Below, in pieces: positions 7,695-47,868 of a stretch of DNA of 64,000 nt (the first letter of the stretch is position 1; every line of letters starts with the position of its first letter). The notes under the pieces are model-generated. The model saw only the letters and a program-made list of their open reading frames with translations, did no database searches and was not told the DNA's origin. The translations under genes were made by a program, and so were the position numbers. The stretch is taken from positions 310,001 through 374,000 of IMG/VR virus record IMGVR_UViG_3300046660_000488; one strand, given 5' to 3'.

Positions 7695-8189
7695 ATGACA
7701 CGCACGATCCGGCGCCTGCCGGTGAACAGGTACTCACGACCGTTCAGACGGTACGTGTACGCCTTCGCCACCAAAGACATCAACGTCCTGCGCGAGCACC
7801 GCTACCGGCCTCCGCCGTGTCCGCAGTACGTGCATGTCTGGCGTGAAGAAATGCGCGACGTCTATACGTGGCATACGCGCACGGTGCAGTATCTGAGCGA
7901 GTACACTCGCCGGTGGGTGTCTTATGAAGAGCACTATAGCACCAAGGTAAAGAAGCTCCAGCGCTGGCAGGAGCGTGTGCCCAACCCGGACTGGGACTGG
8001 CGGGCCGACGACACGCACCACATGTGGATCAACGTCCATCACCATGTCTACCGCAACGGATCGGTGACGCGGTGCAGCGCCATAAACGTGCGCTTGGATC
8101 GTCGTCTCTACCATCAGGCCCAGCGCGCGAGGGCCAAGGTTGCACTGCGGAATTTGGTTGACGAATTTTATAATGAACCGATAGGGTAA
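7695..8189 (+). CDS. Arg-rich basic hypothetical protein
   Basis: GGGGAG RBS; 164 aa. Confidence 0.65.
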   Translation: MTRTIRRLPVNRYSRPFRRYVYAFATKDINVLREHRYRPPPCPQYVHVWREEMRDVYTWHTRTVQYLSEYTRRWVSYEEHYSTKVKKLQRWQERVPNPDWDWRADDTHHMWINVHHHVYRNGSVTRCSAINVRLDRRLYHQAQRARAKVALRNLVDEFYNEPIG

Positions 8190-8210
8190 CCATATTGTGG
8201 AGACCCCATT

Positions 8211-8561
8211 TTGCAACCCGTGTTCTATTTTGGACCCGAACATGAACACCCCGGCTACGTCATGTTCCGGGTCAGTCGTGGGGAGAAGATTCCTAAGAAT
8301 TGGTACAAGGTGAGCACCCGTGTGGCGACGGTTGAGTCGGAGCATCCGGGCAGTTGTCGGCCGGAAGCCGGAGCGTTGGAATGGCCAATCCTCCAGCTAA
8401 AGACGGAGGCCAACAAATGGCTCGACGACCAGTGCCGTGGGCATCAGGCGATCCTGCTTGAACGGCGTGACGAGTGTGGCGTTTATCACGACGTCCACAT
8501 CGAGTTCAGCCGAGTGGAGGACGAAACCCTCTTCCACTTCATGTTCCATTGCGGTGAGTAA
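8211..8561 (+). CDS. hypothetical protein (paralog family, C-terminal F-x-x-x-x-D-x-x-x-F motif)
   Basis: C-terminus IEFSRVEDETLFHFMF. Confidence 0.55.
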   Translation: MQPVFYFGPEHEHPGYVMFRVSRGEKIPKNWYKVSTRVATVESEHPGSCRPEAGALEWPILQLKTEANKWLDDQCRGHQAILLERRDECGVYHDVHIEFSRVEDETLFHFMFHCGE

Positions 8562-8777
8562 GTGTCCAAGCTCTACATCGTCGAAGGTCTCTACGAGAGC
8601 TACAAAGCACCGGCTCTCAAGTACTGGGGCATGGTCGCGTTCAACGACTATGGCTACGGCGTCTTCAAGGATAAGGCGGCGGCGGACTTGATGATCGCGA
8701 TGGCGGATATTTCGCAGATTGGTATTCATCCGAGAGACAAACTCGTGAAGCTTCGCATTGTGAAGCAGCGCGTCTAA
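8562..8777 (+). CDS. hypothetical protein
   Basis: GTG directly after upstream stop. Confidence 0.55.
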   Translation: MSKLYIVEGLYESYKAPALKYWGMVAFNDYGYGVFKDKAAADLMIAMADISQIGIHPRDKLVKLRIVKQRV

Positions 8778-8798
8778 CCAATACTTCAGGTAATTTCT

Positions 8799-9059
8799 AT
8801 GACCGATTTCAGTGACCAAAAAACGCTCACGTCTCTCTTCGTGCATGCGCTGATGTACATCATCCCCGAAGATCATGCGCTCGTCGTCGAGTTCCAAGGC
8901 GAGAAATACGACCTGACGCGCAAGGGCGACAATTTCGAAATCTGGCCGTGCGATTACGACACCGCGCCGGGCTCCATTGTCACGACGGTCGAGGTCGCGC
9001 CGGAAGAAAAGGGAATGTTCGACCAGTTGAACGACATGATCAACAGGATGAAGCCGTAA
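8799..9059 (+). CDS. hypothetical protein
   Basis: 86 aa ORF. Confidence 0.6.
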   Translation: MTDFSDQKTLTSLFVHALMYIIPEDHALVVEFQGEKYDLTRKGDNFEIWPCDYDTAPGSIVTTVEVAPEEKGMFDQLNDMINRMKP

Positions 9060-9125: not shown

Positions 9126-10418
9126 ATGGACATCGAACTGAAATCGGATTTCCTGCGCGTGATGCAGGAGCGTGGCTTCATCCACCAATGCACCAATCTG
9201 GCTGCGTTGGACGAGGTCATGGCTACGGGTCCGATGAAGGCCTACATCGGCTTCGACCTGACGGCTGACAGCCTGCACGTCGGATCGCTGATCCAACTGA
9301 TGGTCCTACGTCACCTGATCTCGACCGGCCACACGCCGGTGATCCTGTTCGGCGGCGCGACCACGCGCATCGGTGATCCGACCGGCAAGGACAGCATGCG
9401 TCCCCAGTTGACGCCCGATCAGATCGAGACGAACGAGGTCGGCATCCTGAAGGTGGTTGACCGCATCGTCGGCCGGTTCGCTCTCGACCAGAAAAAGAAC
9501 GTTCCGACCATCCTCAACAATCTGACGTGGATGCAGCCCAGCAGGACGCTGGACTACCTGCGGGAGTACGGGCCGCACTTCACGATCAACCGCATGCTGA
9601 CGCTCGACAGTGTCAAGACGCGGCTTGAGCGCCAGCAGCCGATGACGTTCCTCGAATTCAACTACATGCTGTTCCAAGCCATCGACTTCCGGTGGCTGAA
9701 CAGCAACTGCGACATCGAGCTTCAGATCGGCGGCTCCGACCAGTGGGGCAACATCGTCAACGGCGTGGACCTGATTCGTCGCATGGACGGTGAGCAGGCG
9801 TACGGCCTGACCACGCCGCTGCTGGCCAACAGTGCTGGCGAGAAAATGGGCAAGACTGCTGGCGGCGCCGTCTGGCTCGACCCGGACAAGACATCGCCGT
9901 TCGATTTCTGGCAATTCTGGTACAACATCGAGGACGGCAAGGTCGCCTCGTTCCTGCGGTTGTTCACGGAGCTTGATCTGCCGACGATCCGCGACATCTG
10001 CGCGCTCGACATCTTGGAGAGCAAGTCGATCCTCGCGACAGAAATCACGTCGGTCGTGCACGGTCACGAAAAGGCGTTGGAAGTCCTCGACACGGTCAAC
10101 AAGGCCAAGCGCGGCGAGCCGGGTGAGGACTTGGTCTTGATCTCGTGCACAACCAGCATCTACAGCGGTGTGCACGGCTACTGCACGTGGGCCGACATGT
10201 TTGCCGAAGACCCGACCGGTGAGCCTAACCTGTCGAAGGGCGAGACCACGCGGCTGGTCGCCAATGGCGGCATCAAGCTCGACGGCGTGAAGCTGACGGA
10301 TGCGCGTGAATTCGTGAAGGACACGGTTCGCAATCGTCACCTTCAGGGCAAGACGGTCCTGCTGACCATCGGCAAGAAGCGCGCCTTCCGCATTTCCTTC
10401 CCGGAGGAACGCACATGA
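9126..10418 (+). CDS. tyrS: tyrosyl-tRNA synthetase
   Basis: YIGFDLTADSLHVGS (HIGH), FNYMLFQAIDF, QIGGSDQWGNI, KMGKT (KMSKS), C-terminal S4-like domain. Confidence 0.95.
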   Translation: MDIELKSDFLRVMQERGFIHQCTNLAALDEVMATGPMKAYIGFDLTADSLHVGSLIQLMVLRHLISTGHTPVILFGGATTRIGDPTGKDSMRPQLTPDQIETNEVGILKVVDRIVGRFALDQKKNVPTILNNLTWMQPSRTLDYLREYGPHFTINRMLTLDSVKTRLERQQPMTFLEFNYMLFQAIDFRWLNSNCDIELQIGGSDQWGNIVNGVDLIRRMDGEQAYGLTTPLLANSAGEKMGKTAGGAVWLDPDKTSPFDFWQFWYNIEDGKVASFLRLFTELDLPTIRDICALDILESKSILATEITSVVHGHEKALEVLDTVNKAKRGEPGEDLVLISCTTSIYSGVHGYCTWADMFAEDPTGEPNLSKGETTRLVANGGIKLDGVKLTDAREFVKDTVRNRHLQGKTVLLTIGKKRAFRISFPEERT

Positions 10419-10564
10419 AACTGCTCTTCTGGCGAAAGCCCAAGCCTGCACCTGAGCCCAAGCCGGAACCTCCGGCGGGCTACAAATCACTGGCGGAGGC
10501 CGAAGCGGCTCTCCGGCGCGGCGAGATCACAATGCTCGTCTACGAGAAAGGGACCATCGTCTGA
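10415..10564 (+). CDS. small hypothetical protein (49 aa, MKLLFWRKPKP...)
   Basis: GGAGG RBS, ATGA overlap with tyrS stop, TGATG coupling to next gene; translated by hand. Confidence 0.6.
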   Translation: MKLLFWRKPKPAPEPKPEPPAGYKSLAEAEAALRRGEITMLVYEKGTIV

Positions 10565-11127
10565 TGATCCGCCAACTCCTGTCTGGATTTTTCGAAACCA
10601 TGGCCGCCATCTTCCGCATCAACGACGGCGACAATGTCGCTGGTCGGAACCTCTTCATCAGCAGCAACCTCGTCATCATCGACGGCGTCGAATATGACAT
10701 GAAGGGCGTCCCTCCGGTGAAGCTGGAGATCGTCAACGGTTCGCTCGACACGCTAAGGGTCTACGGCAACGCCTATGTCGCTGAAGCCGTCACGGTCAAA
10801 ACCGTGGACGCCAGCGGCAACGTCGTCTGCGGACCTGTGACCGGCGACGTGGACGCCAGCGGCGACGTGACCGTGCACGGCAGTGTCGGCGGAAACGTCG
10901 ATTCGTCCAGCGACGTGACGGTCACCGGAAGCGTGGGCGGCTATGTGGACGCCTCGGGTGACGTTCGCTGCGGCGATGTCGGCCAGTACGTCGAATCTTC
11001 CGGCGACGTTGAGGCCGGAGACGTGAACGGCAACATCGACGCCTCGGGTGATGTGACCTGCGGCGGCATCAACGGCAACATCGACGCCTCGGGCGACGTG
11101 ACCGTGAACACCGGCCGTCCGGCATGA
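10564..11127 (+). CDS. beta-solenoid repeat protein (bactofilin-like)
   Basis: Seven 15-16 aa repeats of V/I-x-G-x-V/I-D-A-S-G-D-V. Confidence 0.7.
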   Translation: MIRQLLSGFFETMAAIFRINDGDNVAGRNLFISSNLVIIDGVEYDMKGVPPVKLEIVNGSLDTLRVYGNAYVAEAVTVKTVDASGNVVCGPVTGDVDASGDVTVHGSVGGNVDSSSDVTVTGSVGGYVDASGDVRCGDVGQYVESSGDVEAGDVNGNIDASGDVTCGGINGNIDASGDVTVNTGRPA

Positions 11128-12275
11128 GAATCCTATCCGGCGTCCAGCCCACCGGCAACCTGCACCTTGGCAACTATCTCGGCGCCATCAAGCAGTTCGC
11201 CAAGCTCCAGCAGCCCGGCAACAAGTGCTTCTACAGCGTGGTCGATCTACATGCGATCACCGCTGGCAAGCACGATCCGAACGTGCTGGCCCAGCACACC
11301 CGCGAGATCGCGGCGGCGTACATCGCCTCGGGTGTGGACCCCAACCGCTCGACGATCTTCGTCCAGTCACAGGTTCCGGAAATCGCCGAGCTTCACTGGC
11401 TGCTGTGCAACGTCGCGCGCATGGGCTGGCTGGAACGGATGACGCAGTATCGGGAGAAGACCAACAGCGTCCCTCCCGCTGACCTGCGTGGCATCCTCAG
11501 CCGCGTCGAGAAAGTGCTGAAGGGATCGGGGAGCTACAACCTCGAACCGCTGGAAGGCAATGCCGGGACCGTCTTCAACCACAATGACGTGCTGGCCATG
11601 TACGACATGCTGTCGCGCGTCACCTCCAACAAGGAGGGCGCGAGCGTCGGTCTGTTCACCTATCCGGTGCTGATGGCCGCCGACATCCTGTCGGTCGGCG
11701 CCACGCACGTTCCGGTCGGTCATGACCAACGCCAGCACCTGAACTTGGCTCGCGACATCATCGAGAAGCTGAACACCGACTTCCTGATGGTCCGTGACAT
11801 CCCCGAAGCGCTGCACGTCGCCGAAGGCGCGCGCGTCATGTCGCTGAAGGATGGCACGCGCAAGATGTCCAAGAGCGATGCCGACGACGCTGGCCGGATC
11901 AACATGACCGACAGCGACGAGGTGATCGCCAAGAAGGTCCGCAAGGCGACGGCCGACAGCCTGCCGTTCCCTGAGCACGACGTTGACCTGAAGCCGGAAG
12001 TGGCCAACCTGATCTCGATCTATGCTGGGGTCTCTGGGCTGGCGCGTGAGGCGATCTTCGCCGAATTCGCTGGCAAGGGCTGGGGCGTGTTCAAACCGGC
12101 CCTGACGGACGTCCTGATCACCAACATCGGTCCGATCCGCAACCAGATGGAACGGCTGCTCAAGGACGAAGGCTTCCTCGACTATCTGCTCGGCGAAGGC
12201 GCGATGAAAGCGCGGGAAGAAGCCGCGCGCACCTTGGGCATGACCAAGCACATGATGGGCTTCTACGGTGCTTGA
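11124..12275 (+). CDS. trpS: tryptophanyl-tRNA synthetase
   Basis: MRILSGVQPTGNLHLGNYLG, YPVLMAADIL, VPVGHDQ, KMSKS. Confidence 0.95.
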   Translation: MRILSGVQPTGNLHLGNYLGAIKQFAKLQQPGNKCFYSVVDLHAITAGKHDPNVLAQHTREIAAAYIASGVDPNRSTIFVQSQVPEIAELHWLLCNVARMGWLERMTQYREKTNSVPPADLRGILSRVEKVLKGSGSYNLEPLEGNAGTVFNHNDVLAMYDMLSRVTSNKEGASVGLFTYPVLMAADILSVGATHVPVGHDQRQHLNLARDIIEKLNTDFLMVRDIPEALHVAEGARVMSLKDGTRKMSKSDADDAGRINMTDSDEVIAKKVRKATADSLPFPEHDVDLKPEVANLISIYAGVSGLAREAIFAEFAGKGWGVFKPALTDVLITNIGPIRNQMERLLKDEGFLDYLLGEGAMKAREEAARTLGMTKHMMGFYGA

Positions 12276-12375
12276 TCTGGCCAACCAAATCGCCGGTGTC
12301 AGTGTTGCGGTTATCACCGCCTCACTGGCATCCGGCTTTGCTGGTATTCGTTACATCGCCCGCAACTGGCGTTAG
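12268..12375 (+). CDS. 35 aa single-TM peptide ([35 protein letters not shown])
   Basis: Translated by hand; GTG overlaps trpS end and TAG overlaps prs stop; hydrophobic core then basic tail. Confidence 0.4.
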
Positions 12376-13286
12376 ATACTGAGGCGAGACACCGACTCTT
12401 CGTGAGCCGCCCGGCGGATCGCTTCGCCGAACACGTCAGCCACCGACACCACCCGGATTTTCTTTGGCAGGTCCGCCTGCGGGATCGTGTCGGTGATAAC
12501 CACGGTCTTGATTGGCGAAGCGATGATGCGCTCGCGGGCTGGGCCAGACAGCACCCCGTGGGTGACGTAGGCGCTGACCGAAGCCGCACCCTTGGCGAGA
12601 AGAGCGTCGGCCGCGTGGCAGAGCGTTCCGGCCGTATCGACGATGTCGTCGTACAGGATGCAGTCGAAGCCTTCGACGTCGCCGATGATGTTCATCACCT
12701 CGCTCTCGTTGGCCTTCTCGCGGCGCTTGTCCACGATGGCCATGCCGATGCCGAGCTTTCCGGCCAGACCACGGGCGCGCACGACGCCGCCGACGTCAGG
12801 GGAGACGACGAGCGGGTTCTTGTAGCTGCGCTCGATGTCGCGGGCCAGCGTCGGCATGGCGGCGAGGTTGTCCACCGGGATGTTGAAGAAGCCTTCGATC
12901 TGTCCGGCGTGCAGGTCCATGGTCAGGATGCGCTGGGCGCCCGCCGTGGTCAGGATGTCGGCGACCAGCTTGGCCGAGATCGCCGTGCGACCGCCTTTGC
13001 GATCCTGCCGGGCGTAGCCGAAGTAGGGGATGACGGCAGTGATCCGCTTGGTGCTGGCGCGCTTGAGCGCGTCGATGCAGATCAGAAGCTCCATTAGGTT
13101 GTCGTTGGCTGGATTGCTGGTCGATTGCATGACGTAGACGTCCTGCCCGCGCATGTTCTCGAAGATGCGGACGGAGATTTCCTTGTCGGAGAACGTCTTG
13201 ACCGTGGACTCACACAGACGGATGCCGAGATATTCGGCAACGGTCTCGGCGAAAGCCGGATTGGAATTGCCAGCCAACAGCTTCAT
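12372..13286 (-). CDS. prs: ribose-phosphate pyrophosphokinase (PRPP synthetase)
   Basis: [48 protein letters not shown]. Confidence 0.95.
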
Positions 13287-13353: not shown

Positions 13354-13851
13354 TCAGGATTCGAAGAAGAAATGGTCCGCCAGTTCGAGGAATTTGTCGA
13401 GGGGCAGGAGCCAGTAATCCTTGTAGACGATGATCGGTTCCAACGGGACGCTACCTTTGTCCACGACGACCATTTCCGGCACGTTGTTGAACTTCATAAT
13501 GACGAGGACTTTCTTGTTCGCCTGCTTGGCGTCATGCTCGCACTGCTTGATCCACTCGTCGATGAACGTGCATTTCTGGTTCACCATGGACACGAAGGTC
13601 GGCGGCGTCTTGTAGTGCTTGCACTCGATGGAGAACTTGAAGCCGTCCGGGCAGATGATGTCGCCGAACGTCGCTTTGTCTAGGTCGTGAGTCTGCGTGC
13701 GGCGCGCGTTGCTTCCGCCGAAGAACGATCCTGAGTCTGCATTTCGGCGAAACGATTTCTCGATGCCTGTATGCTTCTCGAAGCGAGAAGAGAACGTGTT
13801 CGAGATTTTACGCTCGAAGGTGTTGCCTTTGTTTTTACCGTTAACGGGCAT
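13354..13851 (-). CDS. Holliday junction resolvase-like PD-(D/E)xK nuclease
   Basis: KGNTFER, GDIICP, IECKHY motifs. Confidence 0.75.
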   Translation of the reverse strand: MPVNGKNKGNTFERKISNTFSSRFEKHTGIEKSFRRNADSGSFFGGSNARRTQTHDLDKATFGDIICPDGFKFSIECKHYKTPPTFVSMVNQKCTFIDEWIKQCEHDAKQANKKVLVIMKFNNVPEMVVVDKGSVPLEPIIVYKDYWLLPLDKFLELADHFFFES

Positions 13852-13880
13852 GAGTTCCACTGCTGAATAAACGCTGCCCT

Positions 13881-14249: not shown

Positions 14250-14431
14250 CCATCATGGCTGCTTTTGGCGTCATCCTCGCCGTTCTGTGTTCGGTCGGAA
14301 CCTACTTCGCCATCACCCGTCGTTTGCGGCGCGAGATTTCGGCCGAGTATTTCTGGGCCGCCATGGTCATCCTGTTCGTCGTCCAGATCATCGGCTGGCG
14401 CCTGTTCATCGTCAACGGCGGCCTCGGATGA
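14246..14431 (+). CDS. small two-TM membrane protein
   Basis: Two hydrophobic segments; ATGA overlaps. Confidence 0.6.
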   Translation: MTIMAAFGVILAVLCSVGTYFAITRRLRREISAEYFWAAMVILFVVQIIGWRLFIVNGGLG

Positions 14432-14799
14432 AGTATTATTTCGACGGTGGCTGCAAGCCGAACCCCGGTCAGATGGAAGTGGCGGTGGTCTCCGACGACG
14501 GAGCCGTCAAGCGCCATGGTTTCGTCGGCATGGGGACCAACAACGAGGCCGAATGGCTGGCGTTCATCTGGGCCTGCAATCTGGCGCTGGAGAATGGCCA
14601 CACCGACCTGACGATCAGCGGCGATTCAAAGCTGGTGATCTGCCAAGCCTTGGGCGAATGGCGGGTCAAGCATGAAGCGCTGCGGCCGTTCTACGAAACG
14701 TTCAAGGCGCTGCGGCCCAAGTTCACGAACTTGAAGCTCGTGCACGTTTTGCGCGGCAAGAACCCGGCTGGCCACTACATCGAAAGTCTGCACCGATGA
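14428..14799 (+). CDS. ribonuclease HI-like protein
   Basis: YFDGGCKPNPG, GTNNEAEW, GDSKLVICQ..GEWRVK catalytic D/E/D pattern. Confidence 0.88.
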   Translation: MKYYFDGGCKPNPGQMEVAVVSDDGAVKRHGFVGMGTNNEAEWLAFIWACNLALENGHTDLTISGDSKLVICQALGEWRVKHEALRPFYETFKALRPKFTNLKLVHVLRGKNPAGHYIESLHR

Positions 14800-16180: not shown

Positions 16181-16416
16181 AGGATCGGCAGGTTCGTCTT
16201 CTCGACAAATTTGATTCTGTCTTCTATGTATCGAATGTAACGCTTGCGCTCTTCGTGACTTAGAGACCACGCTTCATCACGAGTGAGACCGCCACGCATG
16301 TGCCAACTCAGCGTAATGACGTGGTCAATCAGTTCCCTCTGTTGAGCGCGAAAGCTCCTGATCAACCGCTGAATATCGTTCGGGTCTGTTAGGCTCAGGA
16401 GCCTTGCTCGAAAAAA
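16177..16416 (-). CDS. gp51-like baseplate/tail assembly chaperone; may be translated as a frameshift extension of the upstream gene
   Basis: LSWHMRGGLTRDEAWSLSHEER...LPIL; no ATG between the upstream stop and the motif. Confidence 0.6.
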   Translation of the reverse strand, partial: FFRARLLSLTDPNDIQRLIRSFRAQQRELIDHVITLSWHMRGGLTRDEAWSLSHEERKRYIRYIEDRIKFVEKTNLPIL

Positions 16417-17522
16417 GTTGACGGGTTGAACTCGATCTCGGTTTCCCATTCGTGCTGGCAAGCCGTGCACGCCACGTGGATAGCCTTGTCGATGCCCTTG
16501 GTGTTGATCTCGCGCAGCTTGGCTTCGAGCTTGGAGGTCATTGACCGGCCGACGTTCTGGATGAAGCGGCCAATGGCCCCACGATCCGTCACGGTGGCTT
16601 CCGGGGTAACCAGCGCCACGATAGCCCCGATCATCGCGTTGGATTGCAGCGACGACAGGCGACGGAACGCGCGGTTACGAGCAGCAGAAATCTGAACCTC
16701 GTCGCCGGATGCTTCCGCGATCTGTAGGGATCGACCTTCCTCGTAGCTGGTCAGCGTGATGGTCGTCACCGTCTCCAGCGTATAGGGCTTGACATAGGCG
16801 GTAAGGCCCGGAGCCAGTTCGACCGGGTTCTGCTGATCTACATAGGTCATCGAGCCCATGACGGACGGCAGGTGGCACTCGAACGTGTGCTCGGCGCCGC
16901 AGGACGGGCAAGCAACCTCGATCTCCATGTTGTCGCCATACGATGCGGCGCGGATGGCCAGCAGCAGGACGTCAAGGTCCGGGCTCGACACGGCGCGCGG
17001 GTTTCGGATCGCCGGGACGCACGACTTCAGAAGTTCCTCGATAGCGTATCCGCTCATCAGGGCGTCGGGGTTCTTCATCAGAAGCTCGTCCTGAGCCCGC
17101 ATCGGGAAGATCGGCACTTCGTGGTTCAGGGCCGGGTTGTAGTCCCGTTGATCGAAGAACGCGCCACGGGTCGGGAGCATCACCGTCAGGCCGGGCACGC
17201 GATAGAAGCGCGCCAGCGGGTCGATGGCCGCCTGTTGAGCCTGATCCAGCGCGGCCAGTGCTTCAGCCGGAGACGTGAAGGGCTGCTCGCCGAACGCTGG
17301 GAACGACGGCGGAGCGCCCATGCCCGGAGGCGGAGCGAACGCTTGGGGCGCGGGCTGCGTGAACTCGGTCCGATGCTGCGGTTGCGGCTGTTGGACCTGT
17401 TGCGGACGCGGCGGCGGGATGTGAGGCGCGGCCGGGCGCTGCATGGCTTGGAACGGATGGGGCGGCGGAAGATCACCGTCACCGTAGTTCTCGTTGAATT
17501 CGTCGTCGGGGAATTGCGTCAT
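16395..17522 (-). CDS. T4 gp26-like baseplate hub assembly protein with Pro/Gln-rich N-terminus
   Basis: LARFYRVP...LPTRG...PIFPMRAQDELLMKNPDALMSG...SCVP; CPSC and CTAC pairs. Confidence 0.75.
   Translation of the reverse strand: MTQFPDDEFNENYGDGDLPPPHPFQAMQRPAAPHIPPPRPQQVQQPQPQHRTEFTQPAPQAFAPPPGMGAPPSFPAFGEQPFTSPAEALAALDQAQQAAIDPLARFYRVPGLTVMLPTRGAFFDQRDYNPALNHEVPIFPMRAQDELLMKNPDALMSGYAIEELLKSCVPAIRNPRAVSSPDLDVLLLAIRAASYGDNMEIEVACPSCGAEHTFECHLPSVMGSMTYVDQQNPVELAPGLTAYVKPYTLETVTTITLTSYEEGRSLQIAEASGDEVQISAARNRAFRRLSSLQSNAMIGAIVALVTPEATVTDRGAIGRFIQNVGRSMTSKLEAKLREINTKGIDKAIHVACTACQHEWETEIEFNPSTFFEQGS
16410..16416 (-). promoter_or_regulatory. candidate -1 frameshift heptamer T TTT TTC
   Basis: In frame in gp26-like gene; AGGCTC-CT-GAGCCT hairpin starts 5 nt downstream. 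Confidence 0.55.
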
Positions 17523-20393: not shown

Positions 20394-22193
20394 ATGTGGA
20401 CGAAACACTTCCGGAAAGTTGACCGGGCCTCTTATACTTCTGATCAACTTCCTGTACATGCGGGCGACAACTTCAATGGCGCGGCGACAAGCTCGAAATT
20501 TTCGAGCTTCTTGCCGGAGGTCTATGCTGGTCACCCTAACCGCATCCAGCGCTACTACCAATACGCTGAAATGGACCGCGACAGTGACATCGGCGCCGCG
20601 CTGAACACCATCGCCGATTTCTGCACCCAGTCGGAAGAACAGGCCGAAGAGCCGTTCATGATCAAGTTCGACGATGACGCCTCTGAAGCAGAGATCAACG
20701 TCATCAACACGAATCTGAAGGTCTGGGTCAAGATCAACAAGTTCCGTAGCCGTCTGTGGGAGATTTTCCGCAAGACGATCATGAACGGTGACCAATTCTT
20801 CCTGCGCGATCCCGAGACCATGGAATGGCTCTGGGTCGATCACTTCGCCGTGGAAATGGTCGAAGTCGATGACGCCAAGGGCAAGAAGCCGGACAAGTAC
20901 GTGATCCGTGGCCTCGACCTGAACCGTCAGGTCAAGTTCGCCACGCGCTCGGCCGACCCCACCCAGTATCGCAACCCCTTCGGCACGAGCCTCGTGCCCG
21001 GCGCTCGCGCGGCTCCGCCGCCTTCGTCGTCGGCCGGTGGCGCCAATGTGTTCCAGATGGCTGGCGGCGGTCGTGATGCTCGCCAGAACATGGGCGGCCA
21101 ACAGGCCAACGAACTCGTCGTCATCGAAGCCGAGCACATGATCCACCTTTCGCTGTCGGCGGAAATGGACGTCAACTGGCCGTTCGGCCAATCCGTGCTT
21201 GAGCCCATCTTCAAGACCTACAAGCAGAAAGAACTGCTTGAGGACTCGATCATCATCTATCGCGTCCAGCGCGCCCCCGAGCGCCGCATCTTCTACATCG
21301 ACGTTGGCGACATGAACCCGGTCCGGGCGCGTTCCTACGTCGAGCAAGTCAAGACCGACATCCACCAGCGTCGCATCCCCAACCGTACGGGCGGTGGTTC
21401 GTCGGTGATGGATGCCGCCTACAACCCCATGGGCGTTCTGGACGATTACTTCTTCGCCCAGTCTGCCAATGGTCGCGGCTCGAAGGTCGAAACCCTGCCC
21501 GGTGGTGAACTGGTTGGTGAGATCGGCGACTTGACCTACTTCACCAAGAAGCTGGCCCGTGGTCTGCAAATCCCGACGAGCTACATGTCCTTCGGCGACG
21601 ACAGCCAGCAGGCGACGTTCAATGACGGACGTCTTGGCCAAGCAGTCATCGAAGAATTCAAGTTCAACAAGTACTGCATGCGTCTTCAAGGTCTGCTTTC
21701 GCCGACTTTCGACACTGACTTCAAGTTCTTCCTGAAGAACAACGGCGTCAAGGAAGACCTGTTCGGCATCTTTGAACTCCGTTTTAACCCCCCGCAAAAC
21801 TTCACTAAATATCGCCAGATCGAACTCGACTCTGCACAAGTCGCTGTTTACCAGCAAATCGCCGACAACAAGAAGTTGTCGGAGCGTTTCAAGATGAAGC
21901 GTTACCTCGGAATGACTGACGAGGAGATTTTGGAAAACGAGCGCATGTGGAAGGAAGAGAACCCGACGAAGGTCAAGAAGGTGCAAGGCGCCACTTCGGC
22001 CGAGTCGGAGCCGGAAGGCGATCTGGCATCGGTTGGCCTGCGTATGCCCGGAGACGATGGCATGGGCGATCTCGGCGACGAAACGATGCCTGACGACATG
22101 AACGCAGATGGGGCCATGGCTCCAGACGCAGGCGCCGGGGCTCCGCCTCCTCCAGCCGGTGGTGACGCCGGTGGCGGCGGTCCTCCGCTCTAA
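20394..22193 (+). CDS. portal protein (T4 gp20-like)
   Basis: LLEDSIIIYRVQRAPERRIFYIDVG, DDYFF, GSKVETLPGG. Confidence 0.95.
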   Translation: MWTKHFRKVDRASYTSDQLPVHAGDNFNGAATSSKFSSFLPEVYAGHPNRIQRYYQYAEMDRDSDIGAALNTIADFCTQSEEQAEEPFMIKFDDDASEAEINVINTNLKVWVKINKFRSRLWEIFRKTIMNGDQFFLRDPETMEWLWVDHFAVEMVEVDDAKGKKPDKYVIRGLDLNRQVKFATRSADPTQYRNPFGTSLVPGARAAPPPSSSAGGANVFQMAGGGRDARQNMGGQQANELVVIEAEHMIHLSLSAEMDVNWPFGQSVLEPIFKTYKQKELLEDSIIIYRVQRAPERRIFYIDVGDMNPVRARSYVEQVKTDIHQRRIPNRTGGGSSVMDAAYNPMGVLDDYFFAQSANGRGSKVETLPGGELVGEIGDLTYFTKKLARGLQIPTSYMSFGDDSQQATFNDGRLGQAVIEEFKFNKYCMRLQGLLSPTFDTDFKFFLKNNGVKEDLFGIFELRFNPPQNFTKYRQIELDSAQVAVYQQIADNKKLSERFKMKRYLGMTDEEILENERMWKEENPTKVKKVQGATSAESEPEGDLASVGLRMPGDDGMGDLGDETMPDDMNADGAMAPDAGAGAPPPPAGGDAGGGGPPL

Positions 22194-23862: not shown

Positions 23863-24501
23863 ATGTCTAAGTTTCTCACTGAACGCCTGACTTTCGACGA
23901 AGCCAATCTGACCATCGAACGACTGGTCGAAGGTGAAGGCGAGAACGCGAAGAAGTCGCTGTTCATGTCGGGCGTGTTCATTCAGGGCGGCGTCCGCAAC
24001 CTGAACCAGCGCGTCTATCCGGTCCACGAGATCAGCGGCGCCGTTGACAACATCAACGAGATCATCCGCAAGGGCGAAAGCGTCCTCGGCGAGCTTGATC
24101 ACCCGGAAGAACTGACGATCAACCTCGACCGCGTCACCCACATGATCACCAAGATGTGGATGGAAGGCAATACTGGCATGGGCAAGTTGAAGCTCATCCC
24201 GACGCCGAGCGGTGAAATTGCCCGCACGATGCTGGAAGCCGGTGTGAAGCTGGGCGTTTCGAGCCGTGGTTCGGGCAACGTCGATGAGAGCGGCCACGTC
24301 TCGGACTACGAGATCGTCACGGTTGACATCGTCGCCCGTCCGTCTGCCCCGAACGCTTACCCCAAAGCCGTCTACGAAGCAATGATGGGCCGTCGCGGGG
24401 CCGTCATCGAAGACCTCGCCCGTTCGGTCATCAACGATCCGAAGGCCCAGAAGCACCTGCACACTGAACTGCTTGGTTGGATCAACAACCTGAAGGCCTA
24501 A
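23863..24501 (+). CDS. prohead protease (T4 gp21-like)
   Basis: NLNQRVYP, GELDHP, LGVSSRGSG, DIVARPSAPNA. Confidence 0.95.
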   Translation: MSKFLTERLTFDEANLTIERLVEGEGENAKKSLFMSGVFIQGGVRNLNQRVYPVHEISGAVDNINEIIRKGESVLGELDHPEELTINLDRVTHMITKMWMEGNTGMGKLKLIPTPSGEIARTMLEAGVKLGVSSRGSGNVDESGHVSDYEIVTVDIVARPSAPNAYPKAVYEAMMGRRGAVIEDLARSVINDPKAQKHLHTELLGWINNLKA

Positions 24502-24525
24502 AAAGCCTGCGAAAACAACACAGAA

Positions 24526-24558
24526 TAGCCCCGCAAAATAATGCGGGGCTAATTCTTC
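24526..24558 (+). terminator. intrinsic terminator
   Basis: TAGCCCCGCA-N6-TGCGGGGCTA. Confidence 0.65.
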
Positions 24559-24609
24559 TCCGAAAATCGCGAAAATTCAGCCTTATTCGGAACGTTTTCA
24601 AACAGCCAC

Positions 24610-24616
24610 ATAAATA
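24610..24616 (+). promoter_or_regulatory. late promoter motif ATAAATA
   Basis: Upstream of scaffold-capsid operon. Confidence 0.65.
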
Positions 24617-24740
24617 TAGCAAGAGTCATTGATATACTTAAGCCTTTTGGATTCTATCCGGTTCGCTTGATTACTGTGGCTCCCGAAGTTCGGGGTAGGG
24701 AAACCTTCCCAATAATTTGAACCCAAGGAGAACTCATCCT

Positions 24741-25988
24741 ATGGATAAAACTCTCGCCAGCATTCTTGGGGCATCCGGTCTCTCTACGGAGATCGTTGAA
24801 AGCCTTCAAGAAGCCTTCGACAAGAAGGTGGCAGAGGCCCGCGCGGAAGCTGAACTGGCGATGCGCGAAGAGTTCGCTCGTCGTTATGAACACGACAAGT
24901 CTGCTCTGGTCGAAGCCATGGACCGTATGCTCACCACGGAAGTGGGAAAGTTTGCGGACCAGAACGCGGCACAGTTTGCCCAGTTCAATGAAGCACGGGA
25001 TGCGTTCCGTGCCGCAGTGAACGAAAGCCGCACCCACTACCAAAAGAAGCTCCGTGAGCACCTGTCCATGACGAAGCAATTCGCCAAGGAACAACTCATG
25101 AAGGAAGCGATGTCTTATCGCGCCGCCAAGAAGTCGCTTGCAGAAGCAAAGGCCTCGGCCCGCGCTGAACTGACCGCCTTCAAGGAAGCTGCTGTCAAGA
25201 CCCAAGCTGCTCGCATGAAGAAGATCGACGAATTCGTTGTCGCACAAGTCGGCAAGGAACTGCGTGAATTCTCTGAAGACCACCGCGCTCTGGTTGAAAC
25301 CCGCGTTAAGCTGGTTACCGAAGGTCGCAAGCGTCTGAAGGAAACTCGCGACGCCTTCATCAAGCAATCGGCCACCAAGGTCGAGCAGATGGTTACGGAA
25401 TCGCTGAAGAGCGAAATGAAGCAACTGCACGAAGACTTGGAGCGTAACCGTCAGAACACGTTCGGTCGCCGTATCTTCGAAGCCGTCGCCGCCGAATACA
25501 TGGCCTCGTATCTCGCCGAAGGCACTGAAGTCAAGAAGCTTCAGAGCATGCTCGAAGGCCAGACTGCCGAACTGAGCGAAGTCAAGACCAAGCTCGATGA
25601 AGCACAAAAGGGCGCCGACCAAATCCGTCGCAAAGCACATCTGGCCGAAAGCCGTGCCGAGCGTAGTCGAGTCATGGCCGAACTTCTCTCTCCTCTTCGT
25701 GGAGAGAAGCGCGTGGTCATGGAAGGCATGCTGGAGACTGTCAAAACCGACAACCTCCGTACTGCTTTCAAGAAACTTCTCCCGGTTGTCATGACTGAAA
25801 GCCGTCGTCCAGCAGCACAGGCCCCGGCCGGTGCACGGAAGCTGATGGAGAACCCCCAAACGCCTACGCGCGCCGTCACTGGCGACCGCGCTAACCGCAC
25901 GCTCTTCGAATCGTCGCAAGCCGAAATCGAAAGCGAAATTGATCTTGAACTCGCGAAAGTCGTCCGACTCGCCGGTATCCAGAAGTAA
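24741..25988 (+). CDS. prohead scaffolding protein (T4 gp22-like)
   Basis: Long coiled coil between protease and capsid genes; AAGGAG RBS; C-terminus VRLAGIQK. Confidence 0.8.
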   Translation: MDKTLASILGASGLSTEIVESLQEAFDKKVAEARAEAELAMREEFARRYEHDKSALVEAMDRMLTTEVGKFADQNAAQFAQFNEARDAFRAAVNESRTHYQKKLREHLSMTKQFAKEQLMKEAMSYRAAKKSLAEAKASARAELTAFKEAAVKTQAARMKKIDEFVVAQVGKELREFSEDHRALVETRVKLVTEGRKRLKETRDAFIKQSATKVEQMVTESLKSEMKQLHEDLERNRQNTFGRRIFEAVAAEYMASYLAEGTEVKKLQSMLEGQTAELSEVKTKLDEAQKGADQIRRKAHLAESRAERSRVMAELLSPLRGEKRVVMEGMLETVKTDNLRTAFKKLLPVVMTESRRPAAQAPAGARKLMENPQTPTRAVTGDRANRTLFESSQAEIESEIDLELAKVVRLAGIQK

Positions 25989-26003: not shown

Positions 26004-27215
26004 ATGAACAAGTTTGAAGGACAGTGGCAAGCCACTAAGAAGGCCCTTTGCGAAGGCGCCGACCTCAAGAAGAACGCTGACGGTACTGCGAACAAGACCA
26101 AGCAGCGCATGATGGAAACCATTCTCGACAACACCCGTCGTGAACTGAAGCTGCTGGAATCGGCCACCGCCGGTGCCACCAACGCCGCCTCCATCGCCAC
26201 CCTGAACAAGGTCATCATGCCGGTCATCCGCCGCGTCATGCCGACCGTGATCGCCAACGAAATCATCGGCATTCAGCCGATGACGGGTCCGGTCGCCCAA
26301 ATCCACACGCTGCGCGTTCGCTACGCCGACACGGTCCCGACCGCTGGCGGTGGTGTTACCGCCGGTAACGAAGCTCTGGGTCCGTTCGACATCGCTCGCT
26401 TCTACAGCGGTAACGAAAACCCGGCTAACCCGCGTGCGGCCTCGACGCCGTCGCTGGAAGGTCGCGCTGGCAACCGCCTGTCGATCCAAATCCTGAAGGA
26501 AGTCGTCGAAGCCAAGACCCGCAAGCTGTCGGCTCGCTGGACCTTCGAAGCTGCTCAGGACGCCCAAGCTCAGCAGGGCATCGACATCGAAGCCGAAATC
26601 ATGGCCGCTCTGGCTCAGGAAATCACGGCCGAAATCGACCAAGAAATCCTGTTCAGCCTGCGCGCCCTGCCGGGTACGCCGGGTTCGATCTTCAAGCAAG
26701 ACGACGTGACGGGCACGCCGACCTTCGTGGGCGACGTCCACGCTGCTCTGGCCATCCTGATCAACCGTCAGTCCAACCTGATCGCTCAGCGCACGCGCCG
26801 TGGTTCGGGTAACTGGGTTGTCGTTTCGCCGACCGCTCTGACGATCCTGCAATCGGCCACCACGTCGGCGTTCGCTCGCACGACGGAAGGCGTTTTCGAA
26901 GCTCCGACCAACACCAAGTACGTTGGTACGCTGAACAACTCGCTGAAGGTCTACGTTGACCAGTACGCCAACGATGCGACCCCGGTCCTCATCGGCTACA
27001 AGGGCAACGAAATGGACGCCGCCGCGTTCTACTGCCCCTACGTTCCGCTGACCTCGTCGGGCGTGATCATCGATCCGCAGACCTTCGAGCCGGTCGTTTC
27101 GTTCATGACCCGCTACGGCTACCTCGAACTGACGAACTCCGCTTCGTCGCTCGGCAACGCCGCTGACTATCTGGGTCTGGTCGGCATCGACACCGGTTCG
27201 CTGACCTTCATCTAA
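26004..27215 (+). CDS. major capsid protein (T4 gp23-like)
   Basis: IGIQPMTGP, AKTRKLSARWTFEAAQD, AEIDQEI, FYCPYVPL, MTRYG. Confidence 0.96.
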   Translation: MNKFEGQWQATKKALCEGADLKKNADGTANKTKQRMMETILDNTRRELKLLESATAGATNAASIATLNKVIMPVIRRVMPTVIANEIIGIQPMTGPVAQIHTLRVRYADTVPTAGGGVTAGNEALGPFDIARFYSGNENPANPRAASTPSLEGRAGNRLSIQILKEVVEAKTRKLSARWTFEAAQDAQAQQGIDIEAEIMAALAQEITAEIDQEILFSLRALPGTPGSIFKQDDVTGTPTFVGDVHAALAILINRQSNLIAQRTRRGSGNWVVVSPTALTILQSATTSAFARTTEGVFEAPTNTKYVGTLNNSLKVYVDQYANDATPVLIGYKGNEMDAAAFYCPYVPLTSSGVIIDPQTFEPVVSFMTRYGYLELTNSASSLGNAADYLGLVGIDTGSLTFI

Positions 27216-46394: not shown

Positions 46395-47735
46395 TTACTT
46401 GGTCTCTTCGACGTAGGCGCCGTGCAGCGCGTCGGTGAACAGGGTTTCGAAATCGATGCCCTCGGGGATGCCGCCAGCGACCACCAGAGTGGGGCTGATG
46501 GACGACAGAAGCTCTTGTGCCGCTTCGATCACTTCGTCGCGGGTCACCGACCGGTAGCGGTCGAGCAGGACTTGGTCCGACTCCGCCTCGCCCTTGGCGA
46601 ACAGTTGGGTGGCGACCGAGTCCGTCACATAGTCCGGGTTACGGTTCTGGGACAGTTGCTGGAGGATGATCTGGTTGCGCGAGCGCGTCCAGTCGGCTTC
46701 GGTGACTTCGCCCTGCGCGATGCGAACCAGTTCGCTGATCGCCGTCTTCAGAAATTCGACGACGTTGCCGGTCGAGGCCGAACCCTTGATGACGAAGAGC
46801 GACAGGTCTGCGTTGCGGAGCAGGCCCGAGCCCACCGAATAACAGAGAGCCTTGCGCTCGCGGGTGTTCTGGAACAGCGGTGAGGACATGCCGCCGCCCA
46901 GCACGTTGGCCAACATGGCGTACTTGGTCAGCGACAGGTCAATCGAGCCCGGCGCCGGGAAGGCGACGTACATGTGCGATTGCTCGAAGCGGTCGTCCTC
47001 GTGGATGGTCACGCCGCCGACGTACTGGGCCGGTTCGATGGCGACGGCCGGAGCGCGCTCCAGATGGCCGAAGTACTTCTCGCCCATGGCGACCAGAGCG
47101 TCGTGGTCCACGTCACCGGCCGCGATCAGCAGCATGTGCTCCGGGTGGTAGAAAGTCTTGACGTAGTTGAACAGGTCGTCCTGCGTGAACGACATGACAT
47201 TTTCGGACGTGCCAAGGATTTCGCGGCCCAGCGGAGTGTTGCCGTAGGCCGTCAGGTCCAACTGGGCGCGGGCGATGTGCGAAATCTTGTCGCCGTACTC
47301 GGCGATCTCTTCGCAGACCACGCCCTTCTCGCGCTCGATCTCGTCCATCGGGAAGGTGGCGTGACAGACGATGTCGGCGAGGATTTCCACCGACTTCTCC
47401 ATGTGCTCGCTCAGGCCCTCGACCAGATAAGAAGTGGCGGCCTTGCCGGTGGCGGCATTCACGTAGCCGCCGAGCACTTCGATCTGTTCGGCGATTTCCT
47501 TGACGTTCCGGTGCTTCGTGCCCTTGAACAGCACGTGCTCCAGATAGTGGGTGATCCCGTTCAACTCGCTGGTCTCGTTGCGAGCGCCGACCTTCGTGTA
47601 GACCGTGACCTGAACCTCGCCCGGCGTGGGACGCACGGCGCTGACCACGCGCAACCCGTTCGGGAGCGTGGTGATGGTGACGCCTTCCTTGGCGGAGACG
47701 ATGGTGTCGGGTGCGGTCTGGGTCAGGTTGGTCAA
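46395..47735 (-). CDS. M16 family (pitrilysin/MPP-like) zinc peptidase
   Basis: TLPNGLRV, HYLEH inverted zinc motif, NAATG, EREKGVVCEEI, LGGGMSSPLFQ; TTG start after AGGAG. Confidence 0.92.
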   Translation of the reverse strand: MTNLTQTAPDTIVSAKEGVTITTLPNGLRVVSAVRPTPGEVQVTVYTKVGARNETSELNGITHYLEHVLFKGTKHRNVKEIAEQIEVLGGYVNAATGKAATSYLVEGLSEHMEKSVEILADIVCHATFPMDEIEREKGVVCEEIAEYGDKISHIARAQLDLTAYGNTPLGREILGTSENVMSFTQDDLFNYVKTFYHPEHMLLIAAGDVDHDALVAMGEKYFGHLERAPAVAIEPAQYVGGVTIHEDDRFEQSHMYVAFPAPGSIDLSLTKYAMLANVLGGGMSSPLFQNTRERKALCYSVGSGLLRNADLSLFVIKGSASTGNVVEFLKTAISELVRIAQGEVTEADWTRSRNQIILQQLSQNRNPDYVTDSVATQLFAKGEAESDQVLLDRYRSVTRDEVIEAAQELLSSISPTLVVAGGIPEGIDFETLFTDALHGAYVEETK

Positions 47736-47868
47736 AGGAACTCCTTGAAACTGAAAGAGCACGGTAGACTGAAAACACGATCTCGTCAACCAGTTTTACT
47801 CTGTGCTGTATAGATTTCTCTCAGAATAGCAGAGAGAAACGCCAAAACCAATTTCCACGTTTGGCCGC

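What the first reader, a model, noticed from the sequence alone, without database searches (positions are those of the whole stretch)
9126..12275. Coupled operon with both class Ic synthetases (TyrRS and TrpRS)
Seen: tyrS, 49 aa ORF, beta-solenoid and trpS are joined by ATGA/TGATG overlaps; both synthetases keep their HIGH and KMSKS-type motifs. Known: HipT and some Caulobacter HipA kinases inactivate TrpRS, and retron Ec78/PtuAB depletes tRNA-Tyr. Inference: the operon is a translation-rescue module against defences hitting aromatic tRNA charging, or it charges phage tRNAs encoded elsewhere.
Basis: partly seen in the sequence, partly recalled or inferred. Interest (0 to 1): 0.7.

Follow-up and report, generated by a model that had tools for sequence, protein, structure and literature searches.

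The report
Huge-phage TyrRS and TrpRS gene pair
The window comes from a complete 578-kb T4-like phage whose intact tyrosyl- and tryptophanyl-tRNA synthetase genes are two of at least twelve synthetases and 69 tRNAs it carries, so this is part of a known kind of phage translation toolkit and there is no sign it is a dedicated anti-defence module.

Summary
On the + strand lie tyrS (9126-10418), a 49-aa ORF (10415-10564), a 187-aa beta-solenoid ORF (10564-11127) and trpS (11124-12275). They are joined by ATGA, TGATG and ATGA overlaps, and both enzymes keep their catalytic motifs.

The context changes the reading. The window lies in a complete 578,292-bp virus genome with T4-like portal, capsid and baseplate genes. 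That genome encodes 69 tRNAs, including two tRNA-Tyr and two tRNA-Trp with bacterial identity elements. It also encodes at least 12 synthetases (Arg, Cys, Asp, Val, Glu, Thr, Ile, Met, Tyr, Trp, Ser and a PheRS-alpha-like gene) plus a HisRS fragment.

Both enzymes fall in phage-specific clades next to alphaproteobacterial enzymes. The TrpRS clade carries a 54-residue insertion.

The tyrS-trpS linkage is a quirk of this lineage. It is shared with one metagenomic contig and was absent from 47 viral TyrRS loci. In relatives trpS sits beside cysS. The two ORFs between the synthetases are orphans, and overlapping junctions are ordinary in this genome.

Most likely function: ordinary charging of phage and host tRNA-Tyr and tRNA-Trp during infection. 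The HipT target serine is kept, and nothing supports a specific anti-toxin role. This is a new member of a known kind, of modest interest.

The parts
7695..9059 (+). Four small co-directional ORFs upstream (164, 116, 71 and 86 aa), probably in the same transcription unit
   Evidence: ORFs, with high GC3. All four have homologs in the same order upstream of tyrS in the closest relative L001. Function unknown.
9126..10418 (+). tyrS: bacterial-type tyrosyl-tRNA synthetase, 430 aa
   Evidence: PF00579 at 1.3e-64. TIGR00234 at 307 bits against a cut-off of 114. phrog_9270 at 8.5e-111. Aligns end to end with E. coli TyrRS 6hb5, residues 4-417, including the C-terminal tRNA-binding domain. GGAG lies 5 nt before the ATG.
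9276..9287 (+). TyrRS HIGH-type motif H51-V-G-S54
   Evidence: H51, G53 and S54 are invariant in A2, in both phage and alphaproteobacterial homologs; position 52 is Val or Ile.
9843..9857 (+). TyrRS KMSKS-type motif K240-M-G-K-T244
   Evidence: K240, M241, G242 and K243 are invariant in A2; position 244 is Thr, or Ser in some homologs.
10415..10564 (+). 49-aa orphan ORF that exactly fills the gap between tyrS and the solenoid gene
   Evidence: GGAGGA lies 6 nt before the ATG, and its ends form the ATGA and TGATG overlaps. GC3 is 0.72, against 0.81-0.85 in its neighbours. No family match. No paralog in the genome. No homolog among 5.8 billion proteins. Absent from relatives. Plausible small gene, unverified.
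10564..11127 (+). 187-aa beta-solenoid repeat protein of unknown function
   Evidence: Bactofilin PF04519 scores 26.1 bits, just under the 27.9 cut-off; FapA is weak. phrog_3163 at 7e-20. The AF2 model has block-mean pLDDT 64-96 for about residues 85-184 and is low-confidence for residues 1-83. Only repeat-level hits in an exhaustive search; those relatives are often HTH_3 plus a bactofilin-like domain. No significant PDB fold match. No paralog. Not at this position in any relative.
11124..12275 (+). trpS: bacterial-type tryptophanyl-tRNA synthetase, 383 aa, with an insertion
   Evidence: PF00579 at 6.5e-66, matched in two stretches. TIGR00233 at 289 bits against a cut-off of 177. Aligns to G. 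stearothermophilus TrpRS residues 4-112 and 113-323. No Shine-Dalgarno sequence; the ATGA overlap with the solenoid gene's stop suggests reinitiation.
11163..11174 (+). TrpRS HIGH-type motif H14-L-G-N17
   Evidence: Invariant in A1 and A3.
11463..11624 (+). 54-residue insertion (residues 114-167) in the Rossmann-fold domain, specific to the phage clade
   Evidence: It lies between residues 112 and 113 of the solved TrpRS. The long phage-context homologs share it, with the motifs VPPxxLR and YDML, and the named bacterial TrpRS lack it. Modelled as two helices, 121-133 and 153-166, at low confidence with pLDDT 45-64.
11862..11876 (+). TrpRS KMSKS motif K247-S251
   Evidence: Invariant in A1. S249 corresponds to E. 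coli S197, the HipT phosphorylation site (PMC6581861).
12292..12336 (.). Stable stem-loop between the convergent trpS and prs genes, a likely end of the + strand unit
   Evidence: Folding 12266-12385 gives -47.6 kcal/mol, z = -3.0, and 1 of 200 shuffles folds as well. The U-run is imperfect, so a terminator function is inferred.
12372..13286 (-). Neighbouring gene on the opposite strand: ribose-phosphate diphosphokinase (prs). Not part of the operon.
   Evidence: NF002320 at 452 bits against a cut-off of 297. Absent from this position in L001, L002 and L003.

Best explanation
tyrS and trpS are intact, bacterial-type class Ic aminoacyl-tRNA synthetase genes. They belong to the large translation gene set of a complete 578-kb T4-like huge phage from a rhizosphere metagenome, whose host is probably an alphaproteobacterium.

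I infer that they do the ordinary job. They activate Tyr and Trp and load them on the phage's own two tRNA-Tyr and two tRNA-Trp, and probably on the host's as well. This would keep phage protein synthesis supplied when host functions decline or demand rises.

The four ORFs are packed without gaps, so they are probably co-transcribed. trpS, which has no ribosome-binding site, is probably translated by reinitiation at the ATGA.

The juxtaposition of the two class Ic enzymes is a rearrangement specific to this lineage, in a variable spot downstream of tyrS. The 49-aa ORF and the solenoid ORF are lineage-specific orphans and not demonstrable parts of a functional module.

Shown: gene identity, motifs, the cognate tRNAs, the synthetase complement, clade membership and synteny. 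Inferred: catalytic activity, which tRNAs are charged, co-transcription and the benefit to the phage.
For: Identity and intactness:
- Equivalog-level HMM scores.
- Full-length alignment to solved TyrRS and TrpRS.
- Catalytic motifs and the Trp-specificity Asp (D187 in MAADIL) are invariant.

Genome context:
- IMG/VR virus record of 578,292 bp with direct terminal repeats and CheckV completeness 100%.
- T4-like portal, Gp23 capsid and baseplate genes, and DNA polymerase B, in the window.
- 69 tRNAs.
- tRNA-Tyr x2 with a long variable arm and A73; tRNA-Trp x2 with G73.
- Synthetases for Arg, Cys, Asp, Val, Glu, Thr, Ile, Met and Ser, a PheRS-alpha-like gene and a HisRS fragment, besides Tyr and Trp.

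Long residence in phages:
- TyrRS sits in a 25-row clade (SH-aLRT 100) with all phage-context homologs, separated from named Alphaproteobacteria by a 0.40 branch.
- TrpRS sits in a 21-row clade (SH-aLRT 99) with the phage-context homologs; the named bacterial TrpRS lack the insertion carried by the long members.

Precedent:
- Phage TrpRS:tRNA and TyrRS:tRNA pairs are active in vitro (PMC12636597).

Linkage is lineage-specific:
- Only L001 shares tyrS...trpS.
- 0 of 47 IMG/VR TyrRS loci have TrpRS within 8 kb.
- 6 of 10 TrpRS loci have cysS next door.
- Two other huge phages carry two class Ic matches, 171 and 422 kb apart.
- This genome keeps the DUF444-SpoVR-cysS-HTH-o284 synteny of its relatives, but without trpS there.
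Against: - There are no expression or biochemical data. No RNA run holds the sequence.
- The host is unknown, so whether host tRNAs are also charged, or whether the phage tRNAs need a dedicated enzyme, is open.
- The TrpRS insertion is conserved in the clade but modelled at low confidence. It could change tRNA choice or add another function.
- The TyrRS C-terminal domain reaches Pfam's SYY_C-terminal only below threshold (16.5 against 27 bits) and has a lineage-specific extra segment near residues 385-400.
- The very tight packing with two orphan ORFs is one of only two such four-gene strings in the genome. A functional link cannot be excluded.
Confidence: 0.75

Rival explanations
1. Anti-defence rescue module. 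The phage copies replace or outnumber host TrpRS and TyrRS that are inactivated by HipT/HipA-type kinases, or they compensate for attacks on tRNA-Tyr such as retron Ec78/PtuAB.
For: HipT phosphorylates TrpS at S197, and that paper describes multicopy suppression data as consistent with its target specificity (PMC6581861). The phage also encodes GluRS, the HipA target, and two tRNA-Tyr. Huge phages are thought to carry genes that repair tRNA damage done by defences (PMC7162821).
Against: The target serine and the whole KMSKS loop are unchanged, so there is no sign of toxin evasion. Ten or more further synthetases with no known toxin link are encoded. tyrS and trpS are unlinked or single in related huge phages. 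No toxin, antitoxin or defence-related family lies in the operon. The PtuAB link concerns the tRNA, not the synthetase.
Confidence: 0.08
2. Dedicated orthogonal pairs. The phage enzymes charge only the phage's own tRNA-Tyr and tRNA-Trp, which host enzymes handle poorly, and the clade-specific TrpRS insertion provides that selectivity.
For: Cognate phage tRNAs exist. The insertion is conserved across the long members of the phage TrpRS clade and is absent from the named bacterial TrpRS. One phage TrpRS:tRNA pair was shown to be orthogonal to E. coli's (PMC12636597). Al-Shayeb et al. propose that phage synthetases charge phage tRNA variants.
Against: The phage tRNAs carry the standard bacterial identity elements (A73 with a long arm; G73 with CCA), so host enzymes should also recognise them (identity rules from established knowledge). 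Some members of the phage TrpRS clade lack the insertion (332-361 aa). The other phage TrpRS tested in that preprint also charged E. coli tRNA.
Confidence: 0.12
3. The four genes form one functional unit. The solenoid protein, and perhaps the 49-aa peptide, would scaffold or regulate TyrRS and TrpRS in the manner of a multi-synthetase complex.
For: Three consecutive start/stop overlaps; only one other such string occurs in the genome. Translational coupling favours matched amounts of products. Beta-solenoids of the bactofilin type polymerise (Pfam description).
Against: Neither ORF has a homolog at this position, even in L001, which shares the tyrS...trpS linkage but has three unrelated ORFs in between. 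The 49-aa ORF has no homolog anywhere. The solenoid matches others only through its repeats. Two such overlap runs are about what chance predicts.
Confidence: 0.04

Closest known systems
Synthetase and tRNA complements of huge phages (Al-Shayeb et al. 2020, PMC7162821)
   Same: A genome over 500 kb with dozens of tRNAs and many synthetases that are related to, but distinct from, those of the presumed host phylum. The proposed role is charging phage tRNAs and redirecting translation.
   Different: 69 tRNAs by ARAGORN here, slightly above the 67 quoted there, and at least 12 synthetases. The phage has T4-like structural genes and comes from a rhizosphere sample. TyrRS and TrpRS are adjacent, which I did not see in 10 other large virus records.
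TyrRS genes of cultured jumbo phages (Yersinia fHe-Yen9-04, Pectobacterium CBB, Serratia BF, Xanthomonas XbC2, Erwinia phages) and of Pseudomonas phage Ostro
   Same: Bacterial-type TyrRS encoded by a phage; phrog_9270.
   Different: Only 32-43% identical. Those phages were not seen to carry a linked TrpRS. The window's TyrRS belongs to a separate clade next to the alphaproteobacterial enzymes.
Phage TrpRS:tRNA pairs in 'code change' operons (AP1 and HF2, PMC12636597)
   Same: A phage-encoded TrpRS with cognate phage tRNAs. Activity was shown experimentally for those pairs.
   Different: Those pairs read UGA with tRNA(UCA) and lie beside their tRNA. Here the tRNA-Trp genes have the normal CCA anticodon and lie about 187 kb away. 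I found no evidence of stop-codon recoding.
Alphaproteobacterial TyrRS and TrpRS (Microvirga, Azospirillum, Emcibacter; Hyphomonas, Caulobacter, Methylobacterium)
   Same: The nearest named cellular relatives, 44-50% identical, with the same motifs including HVGS.
   Different: The phage proteins form separate, well-supported clades. The TrpRS has a 54-residue insertion that the named bacterial enzymes lack.
Bactofilin / FapA beta-solenoid domains
   Same: Short repeats predicted to form a beta-helix. The nearest sequence relatives carry bactofilin-like domains.
   Different: The score is below Pfam's cut-off (26.1 against 27.9 bits). There is no significant structural match to solved bactofilin. 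The N-terminal 83 residues are unassigned.

Membership tests
Bacterial-type tyrosyl-tRNA synthetase (TIGR00234) | Whole-protein score above the curated equivalog cut-off | tested here: met
   307.4 bits against 113.8; residues 10-426 match profile positions 5-404 of 406.
Bacterial-type tyrosyl-tRNA synthetase (TIGR00234) | Class I signature motifs (HIGH-type and KMSKS-type) | tested here: met
   H51-V-G-S54 and K240-M-G-K-T244; H51, G53, S54 and K240-K243 are invariant in A2, and HVGS is also the form found in the alphaproteobacterial enzymes.
Bacterial-type tyrosyl-tRNA synthetase (TIGR00234) | C-terminal S4-like tRNA-binding domain | tested here: inconclusive
   Aligns to E. coli TyrRS through residue 417, and the SKGE...GG.K.NG pattern is present. 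Pfam SYY_C-terminal reaches only 16.5 against 27 bits.
Bacterial-type tyrosyl-tRNA synthetase (TIGR00234) | Tyrosylation of tRNA-Tyr | not testable with these tools
   Needs an aminoacylation assay or complementation. Cognate tRNAs with a long variable arm and A73 are in the genome.
Bacterial-type tryptophanyl-tRNA synthetase (TIGR00233) | Whole-protein score above the curated equivalog cut-off | tested here: met
   289.1 bits against 176.75.
Bacterial-type tryptophanyl-tRNA synthetase (TIGR00233) | HIGH-type motif, KMSKS motif and the specificity Asp | tested here: met
   H14-L-G-N17, K247-M-S-K-S251 and D187 in MAADIL are all invariant in A1.
Bacterial-type tryptophanyl-tRNA synthetase (TIGR00233) | Contiguous catalytic domain of about 330 residues | tested here: not met
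   A 54-residue insertion (114-167) lies between residues 112 and 113 of the solved enzyme. It is a variant shared by a phage clade. It does not remove any catalytic element.
Translationally coupled operon | Same strand, with overlapping stop and start codons at each junction | tested here: met
   ATGA, TGATG and ATGA. Such junctions make up 23% of same-strand pairs genome-wide.
Translationally coupled operon | A single transcript and dependent translation | not testable with these tools
   No RNA run holds the sequence. The promoter scan was uninformative. A stem-loop follows trpS.
Counter-defence against HipT/HipA kinases | A synthetase altered at the phosphorylated serine or loop so that it escapes the toxin | tested here: not met
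   KMSKS is intact, including S249, the equivalent of E. coli S197.
Counter-defence against HipT/HipA kinases | Selective presence of the toxin-targeted synthetases | tested here: not met
   At least 12 synthetases of both classes are encoded.
Counter-defence against HipT/HipA kinases | Rescue of toxin-arrested cells or of phage growth | not testable with these tools
   Needs expression in strains that carry HipBST, HipBA or Ec78.
Bactofilin (PF04519), for the 187-aa ORF | Score above Pfam's gathering threshold | tested here: not met
   26.1 against 27.9 bits.
Bactofilin (PF04519), for the 187-aa ORF | Beta-helical fold like solved bactofilin | tested here: inconclusive
   A beta-solenoid is predicted for residues about 85-184. 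Solved bactofilin appears only at E = 2.5-3 in Foldseek.

The most novel reading that the evidence does not exclude
The 54-residue insertion shared by the long members of the huge-phage TrpRS clade may be a functional module. It could make the enzyme selective for phage tRNA-Trp, shield it from host kinases or inhibitors aimed at TrpRS, or dock it to the neighbouring orphan proteins. The tight tyrS-ORF-ORF-trpS string would then be a phage-private aromatic charging unit and not a chance juxtaposition.
Probability: 0.08. Interest if true: 0.6.

Novelty: new member of a known kind. Interest (0 to 1): 0.3.

Why it matters
Phage-encoded synthetases and large tRNA sets are already described for huge phages, so the finding mainly adds a well-documented case: a complete 578-kb T4-like rhizosphere phage with 69 tRNAs and at least 12 synthetases.

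Three points add a little:
- Both class Ic enzymes belong to old phage-resident clades and are not recent host captures.
- The phage TrpRS clade has a conserved insertion of unknown role.
- Synthetase genes move between variable spots of otherwise syntenic huge-phage genomes. trpS lies next to cysS in most relatives and next to tyrS here.

If the enzymes proved selective for phage tRNAs, they could interest people who build orthogonal translation systems.

Tried and rejected
1. Stop-codon recoding. The genome has two tRNA(CUA) genes. A first test gave 276 in-frame TAG codons flanked by coding-like sequence, against 28 (TAA) and 27 (TGA). This was an artefact: read on the antisense strand, NNC|TAN in high-GC3 genes appears as TAG. 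After requiring GC1 > GC2 the counts were 11, 14 and 5, and TAG ends 108 of 673 called genes. So I found no evidence of genome-wide recoding, and table 11 was used throughout.

2. A link between the suppressor tRNAs and TyrRS or TrpRS. The tRNA(CUA) genes are type I tRNAs and are not closest to the phage tRNA-Tyr or tRNA-Trp. Dropped.

3. Near-identical DNA in the phage collection: none. A single-protein scan of viral contigs with TrpRS found nothing; the alignment-based scan worked.

4. Homologs of the 49-aa ORF and the solenoid in relatives or in the genome itself: none.

5. A PDB fold search for the solenoid gave only generic beta-helices at E > 0.1.

6. The sigma-70 promoter and terminator scan was not above its shuffled controls.

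8. RNA evidence: no RNA run holds the stretch.


Full report
**1. Observation**

- tyrS is 9126-10418. A GTG at 9120 lies inside the GGAG ribosome-binding site, and the ATG at 9126 fits the N-termini of homologs.
- The 49-aa ORF is 10415-10564.
- The 187-aa ORF is 10564-11127.
- trpS is 11124-12275.

The junction sequences are ATGA, TGATG and ATGA.

Family matches are unambiguous.
- tyrS: PF00579 at 1.3e-64 and TIGR00234 at 307 bits (cut-off 114).
- trpS: PF00579 at 6.5e-66 and TIGR00233 at 289 bits (cut-off 177).

Motifs:
- TyrRS has H51-V-G-S54 and K240-M-G-K-T244.
- TrpRS has H14-L-G-N17, K247-M-S-K-S251 and the specificity Asp D187.
- These positions are invariant in the alignments with homologs, except TyrRS V52 and T244.

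The 187-aa ORF is a predicted beta-solenoid over residues about 85-184, with block-mean pLDDT 64-96. Its sequence matches to bactofilin and FapA are below threshold, and it hits phrog_3163.

**2. Is the packing more than chance?**

No. In a rough GC3-based gene call of the genome (673 genes), 90 of 399 same-strand neighbour pairs have a 4-nt or 1-nt start/stop overlap. Runs of three consecutive overlaps occur twice, against about 1.4 expected by my own arithmetic. The overlaps show that the ORFs are packed into one unit and probably co-translated. They are the genome's normal style.

A stable stem-loop at 12292-12336 (z = -3.0) separates trpS from the convergent prs gene.

**3. What the genome is**

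- The window is positions 310,001-374,000 of a single 578,292-bp contig with 59% GC.
- IMG/VR classes it as a virus with direct terminal repeats, and CheckV puts completeness at 100%.
- The window also holds a T4-like portal (Gp20), the Gp23 major capsid protein, a T4 baseplate protein, family B DNA polymerase and a 5'-3' exonuclease.
- The only public run that holds the stretch in full is a rhizosphere metagenome, probably the source sample. No RNA run holds it.

**4. Translation gene set**

ARAGORN finds 69 tRNA genes. None lies in the window. Among them:
- Two tRNA-Tyr(GUA) at 104,363-104,563, 84-85 nt long with a long variable arm, A73 and an encoded CCA end.
- Two tRNA-Trp(CCA) at 507,963-508,339, with G73.

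By established knowledge these are the identity sets of bacterial tRNA-Tyr and tRNA-Trp.

Pfam scans of the whole genome, followed by NCBIfam naming, give these synthetases:
- ArgRS, CysRS, AspRS, GluRS, IleRS, MetRS and SerRS.
- A short ValRS and a short ThrRS.
- A PheRS-alpha-like gene.
- A 171-aa HisRS fragment lying between two tRNA-His genes.

No AlaRS was found. Tyr and Trp are therefore 2 of at least 12.

**5. Relatives and phylogeny**

TyrRS:
- The best non-self matches are 50-57% identical and unnamed.
- Named matches, at 47-50%, are all Alphaproteobacteria.
- In the tree, TyrRS sits in a 25-row clade (SH-aLRT 100) that holds every homolog found on a phage-like contig. A 0.40 branch separates it from the named bacteria. 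Its nearest rows are the TyrRS of L001 and P0003 (SH-aLRT 96; both long branches).

TrpRS:
- A set of long (377-403 aa) homologs is 52-58% identical.
- Named Alphaproteobacteria (332-354 aa) are 44-47% identical.
- TrpRS sits in a 21-row clade (SH-aLRT 99) apart from the named bacteria.

The long TrpRS share an insertion with the motifs VPPxxLR and YDML. Mapped on the solved G. stearothermophilus enzyme, it comprises query residues 114-167, inserted between residues 112 and 113. AlphaFold2 models it as two helices at low confidence.

Both genes are therefore long-standing phage genes of alphaproteobacterial type and not recent pick-ups.

**6. Is the Tyr-Trp linkage conserved?**

Hardly.
- The closest relative, L001 (a 22.5-kb contig; PDDEXK and RNase H neighbours 71% identical), has tyrS, then three ORFs of 182, 78 and 57 aa, then trpS. 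None of the three resembles the 49-aa ORF or the solenoid.
- L002 (a 569,661-bp contig) and L003 have tyrS followed by other genes and then the same PDDEXK and RNase H genes, without trpS.
- Five independent contigs carry trpS (four of them the long form) next to cysS, most of them downstream of DUF444-SpoVR, preceded by PrkA in two of them.
- This genome keeps that block: DUF444, SpoVR, cysS at 146.6 kb, then about 650 bp, then the HTH and o284 genes. trpS is not there.
- Of 47 IMG/VR TyrRS loci with 8-kb flanks, none has a TrpRS. No other TrpRS locus has a TyrRS.
- Of 10 other large virus records, two have two class Ic matches, 422 and 171 kb apart. The rest have one.

So the pair is a derived arrangement in a variable spot between tyrS and the PDDEXK gene. 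In this genome that spot also took up prs.

**7. The two ORFs in between**

The 49-aa ORF has a strong GGAGGA site. It has no homolog in 5.8 billion proteins and no paralog. Its GC3 is lower than its neighbours'.

The solenoid matches other proteins only through its repeats. Those proteins are often HTH_3 plus a bactofilin-like domain. There is no significant PDB fold match.

Both are best described as lineage-specific orphans. I see no evidence that they work with the synthetases.

**8. Mechanism**

The best-supported reading is ordinary aminoacylation as part of a broad phage translation toolkit. This is what was proposed for huge phages in general (PMC7162821). Phage TrpRS and TyrRS pairs have been shown to be active (PMC12636597).

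The phage proteome, by my rough gene call, has 3.4% Tyr and 1.6% Trp. From general knowledge this is richer in Tyr than GC-rich alphaproteobacteria. That is a lead only, because the host is unknown.

**9.

However:
- The phage TrpRS keeps that loop unchanged.
- The genome encodes many synthetases with no toxin link.
- The linkage is not conserved among relatives.

I did not verify the PtuAB and tRNA-Tyr statement in the literature. In any case it concerns the tRNA, not the synthetase.

**10. Dead ends**

A suspected TAG recoding proved to be an antisense-frame artefact. The two tRNA(CUA) genes are not close to the phage tRNA-Tyr or tRNA-Trp. Other negative results are listed under Tried and rejected.

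**Verdict**

- This is a new member of a known kind.
- The modest points of novelty are the phage-specific TrpRS insertion clade and the relocation of trpS.

Noticed in passing
genome 109999-110155 (- strand), outside the window: Two tandem tRNA genes with the amber-suppressor anticodon CUA, called tRNA-Pyl by ARAGORN. After correcting an antisense-frame artefact I found no genome-wide TAG recoding, so their use is unexplained. One frame, 24347-25060 (+), holds 13 in-frame TAG codons and was not examined.
   Followed up: partly
genome 105645-106160 (+), outside the window: A 171-aa HisRS fragment (TIGR00442 at 1.6e-35, N-terminal part only) sits between two tRNA-His genes at 104611-104686 and 106169-106243.
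   Followed up: no
genome about 174947-176425 and 193418-194725, outside the window: Shortened synthetases. The ValRS is about 470-517 aa and matches only parts of the 860-position profile. The ThrRS is 435 aa and starts at profile position 169, so it lacks the N-terminal region. Both may lack editing domains.
   Followed up: partly
genome 142104-150000, outside the window: The phage carries DUF444 and SpoVR homologs (relatives also have PrkA) upstream of cysS. In relatives trpS sits just after cysS, but here that slot is about 650 bp with no trpS remnant.
   Followed up: partly
window 12372-13286 (-): A full-length ribose-phosphate diphosphokinase (prs; NF002320 at 452 bits) is convergent with trpS. 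It is absent from this position in L001, L002 and L003. Whether it is a true Prs or serves a nucleotide or NAD salvage role was not examined.
   Followed up: no
window 16395-17522 (-), 20394-22193 (+), 26004-27215 (+), 58308-61244 (-): T4-like baseplate protein, Gp20 portal, Gp23 major capsid protein and family B DNA polymerase. The 578-kb phage has a T4-like core.
   Followed up: partly
window 46395-47789 (-) and 50056-51258 (+): An M16 (insulinase-type) peptidase and a 400-aa protein made of several PAS domains, which are unusual cargo for a phage.
   Followed up: no
window 13354-13860 (-) and 14287-14799 (+): A PDDEXK_15 nuclease-like gene and an RNase H gene are the conserved anchors downstream of tyrS in all relatives. 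The stretch between tyrS and the PDDEXK gene differs in every genome examined, so it is a hot spot for gene turnover.
   Followed up: partly
P0002, an ENA contig of 2437 bp: A 570-aa protein whose TyrRS-like part is 56% identical to the window's enzyme over 54% of it. It may be a fusion or an extended form.
   Followed up: no
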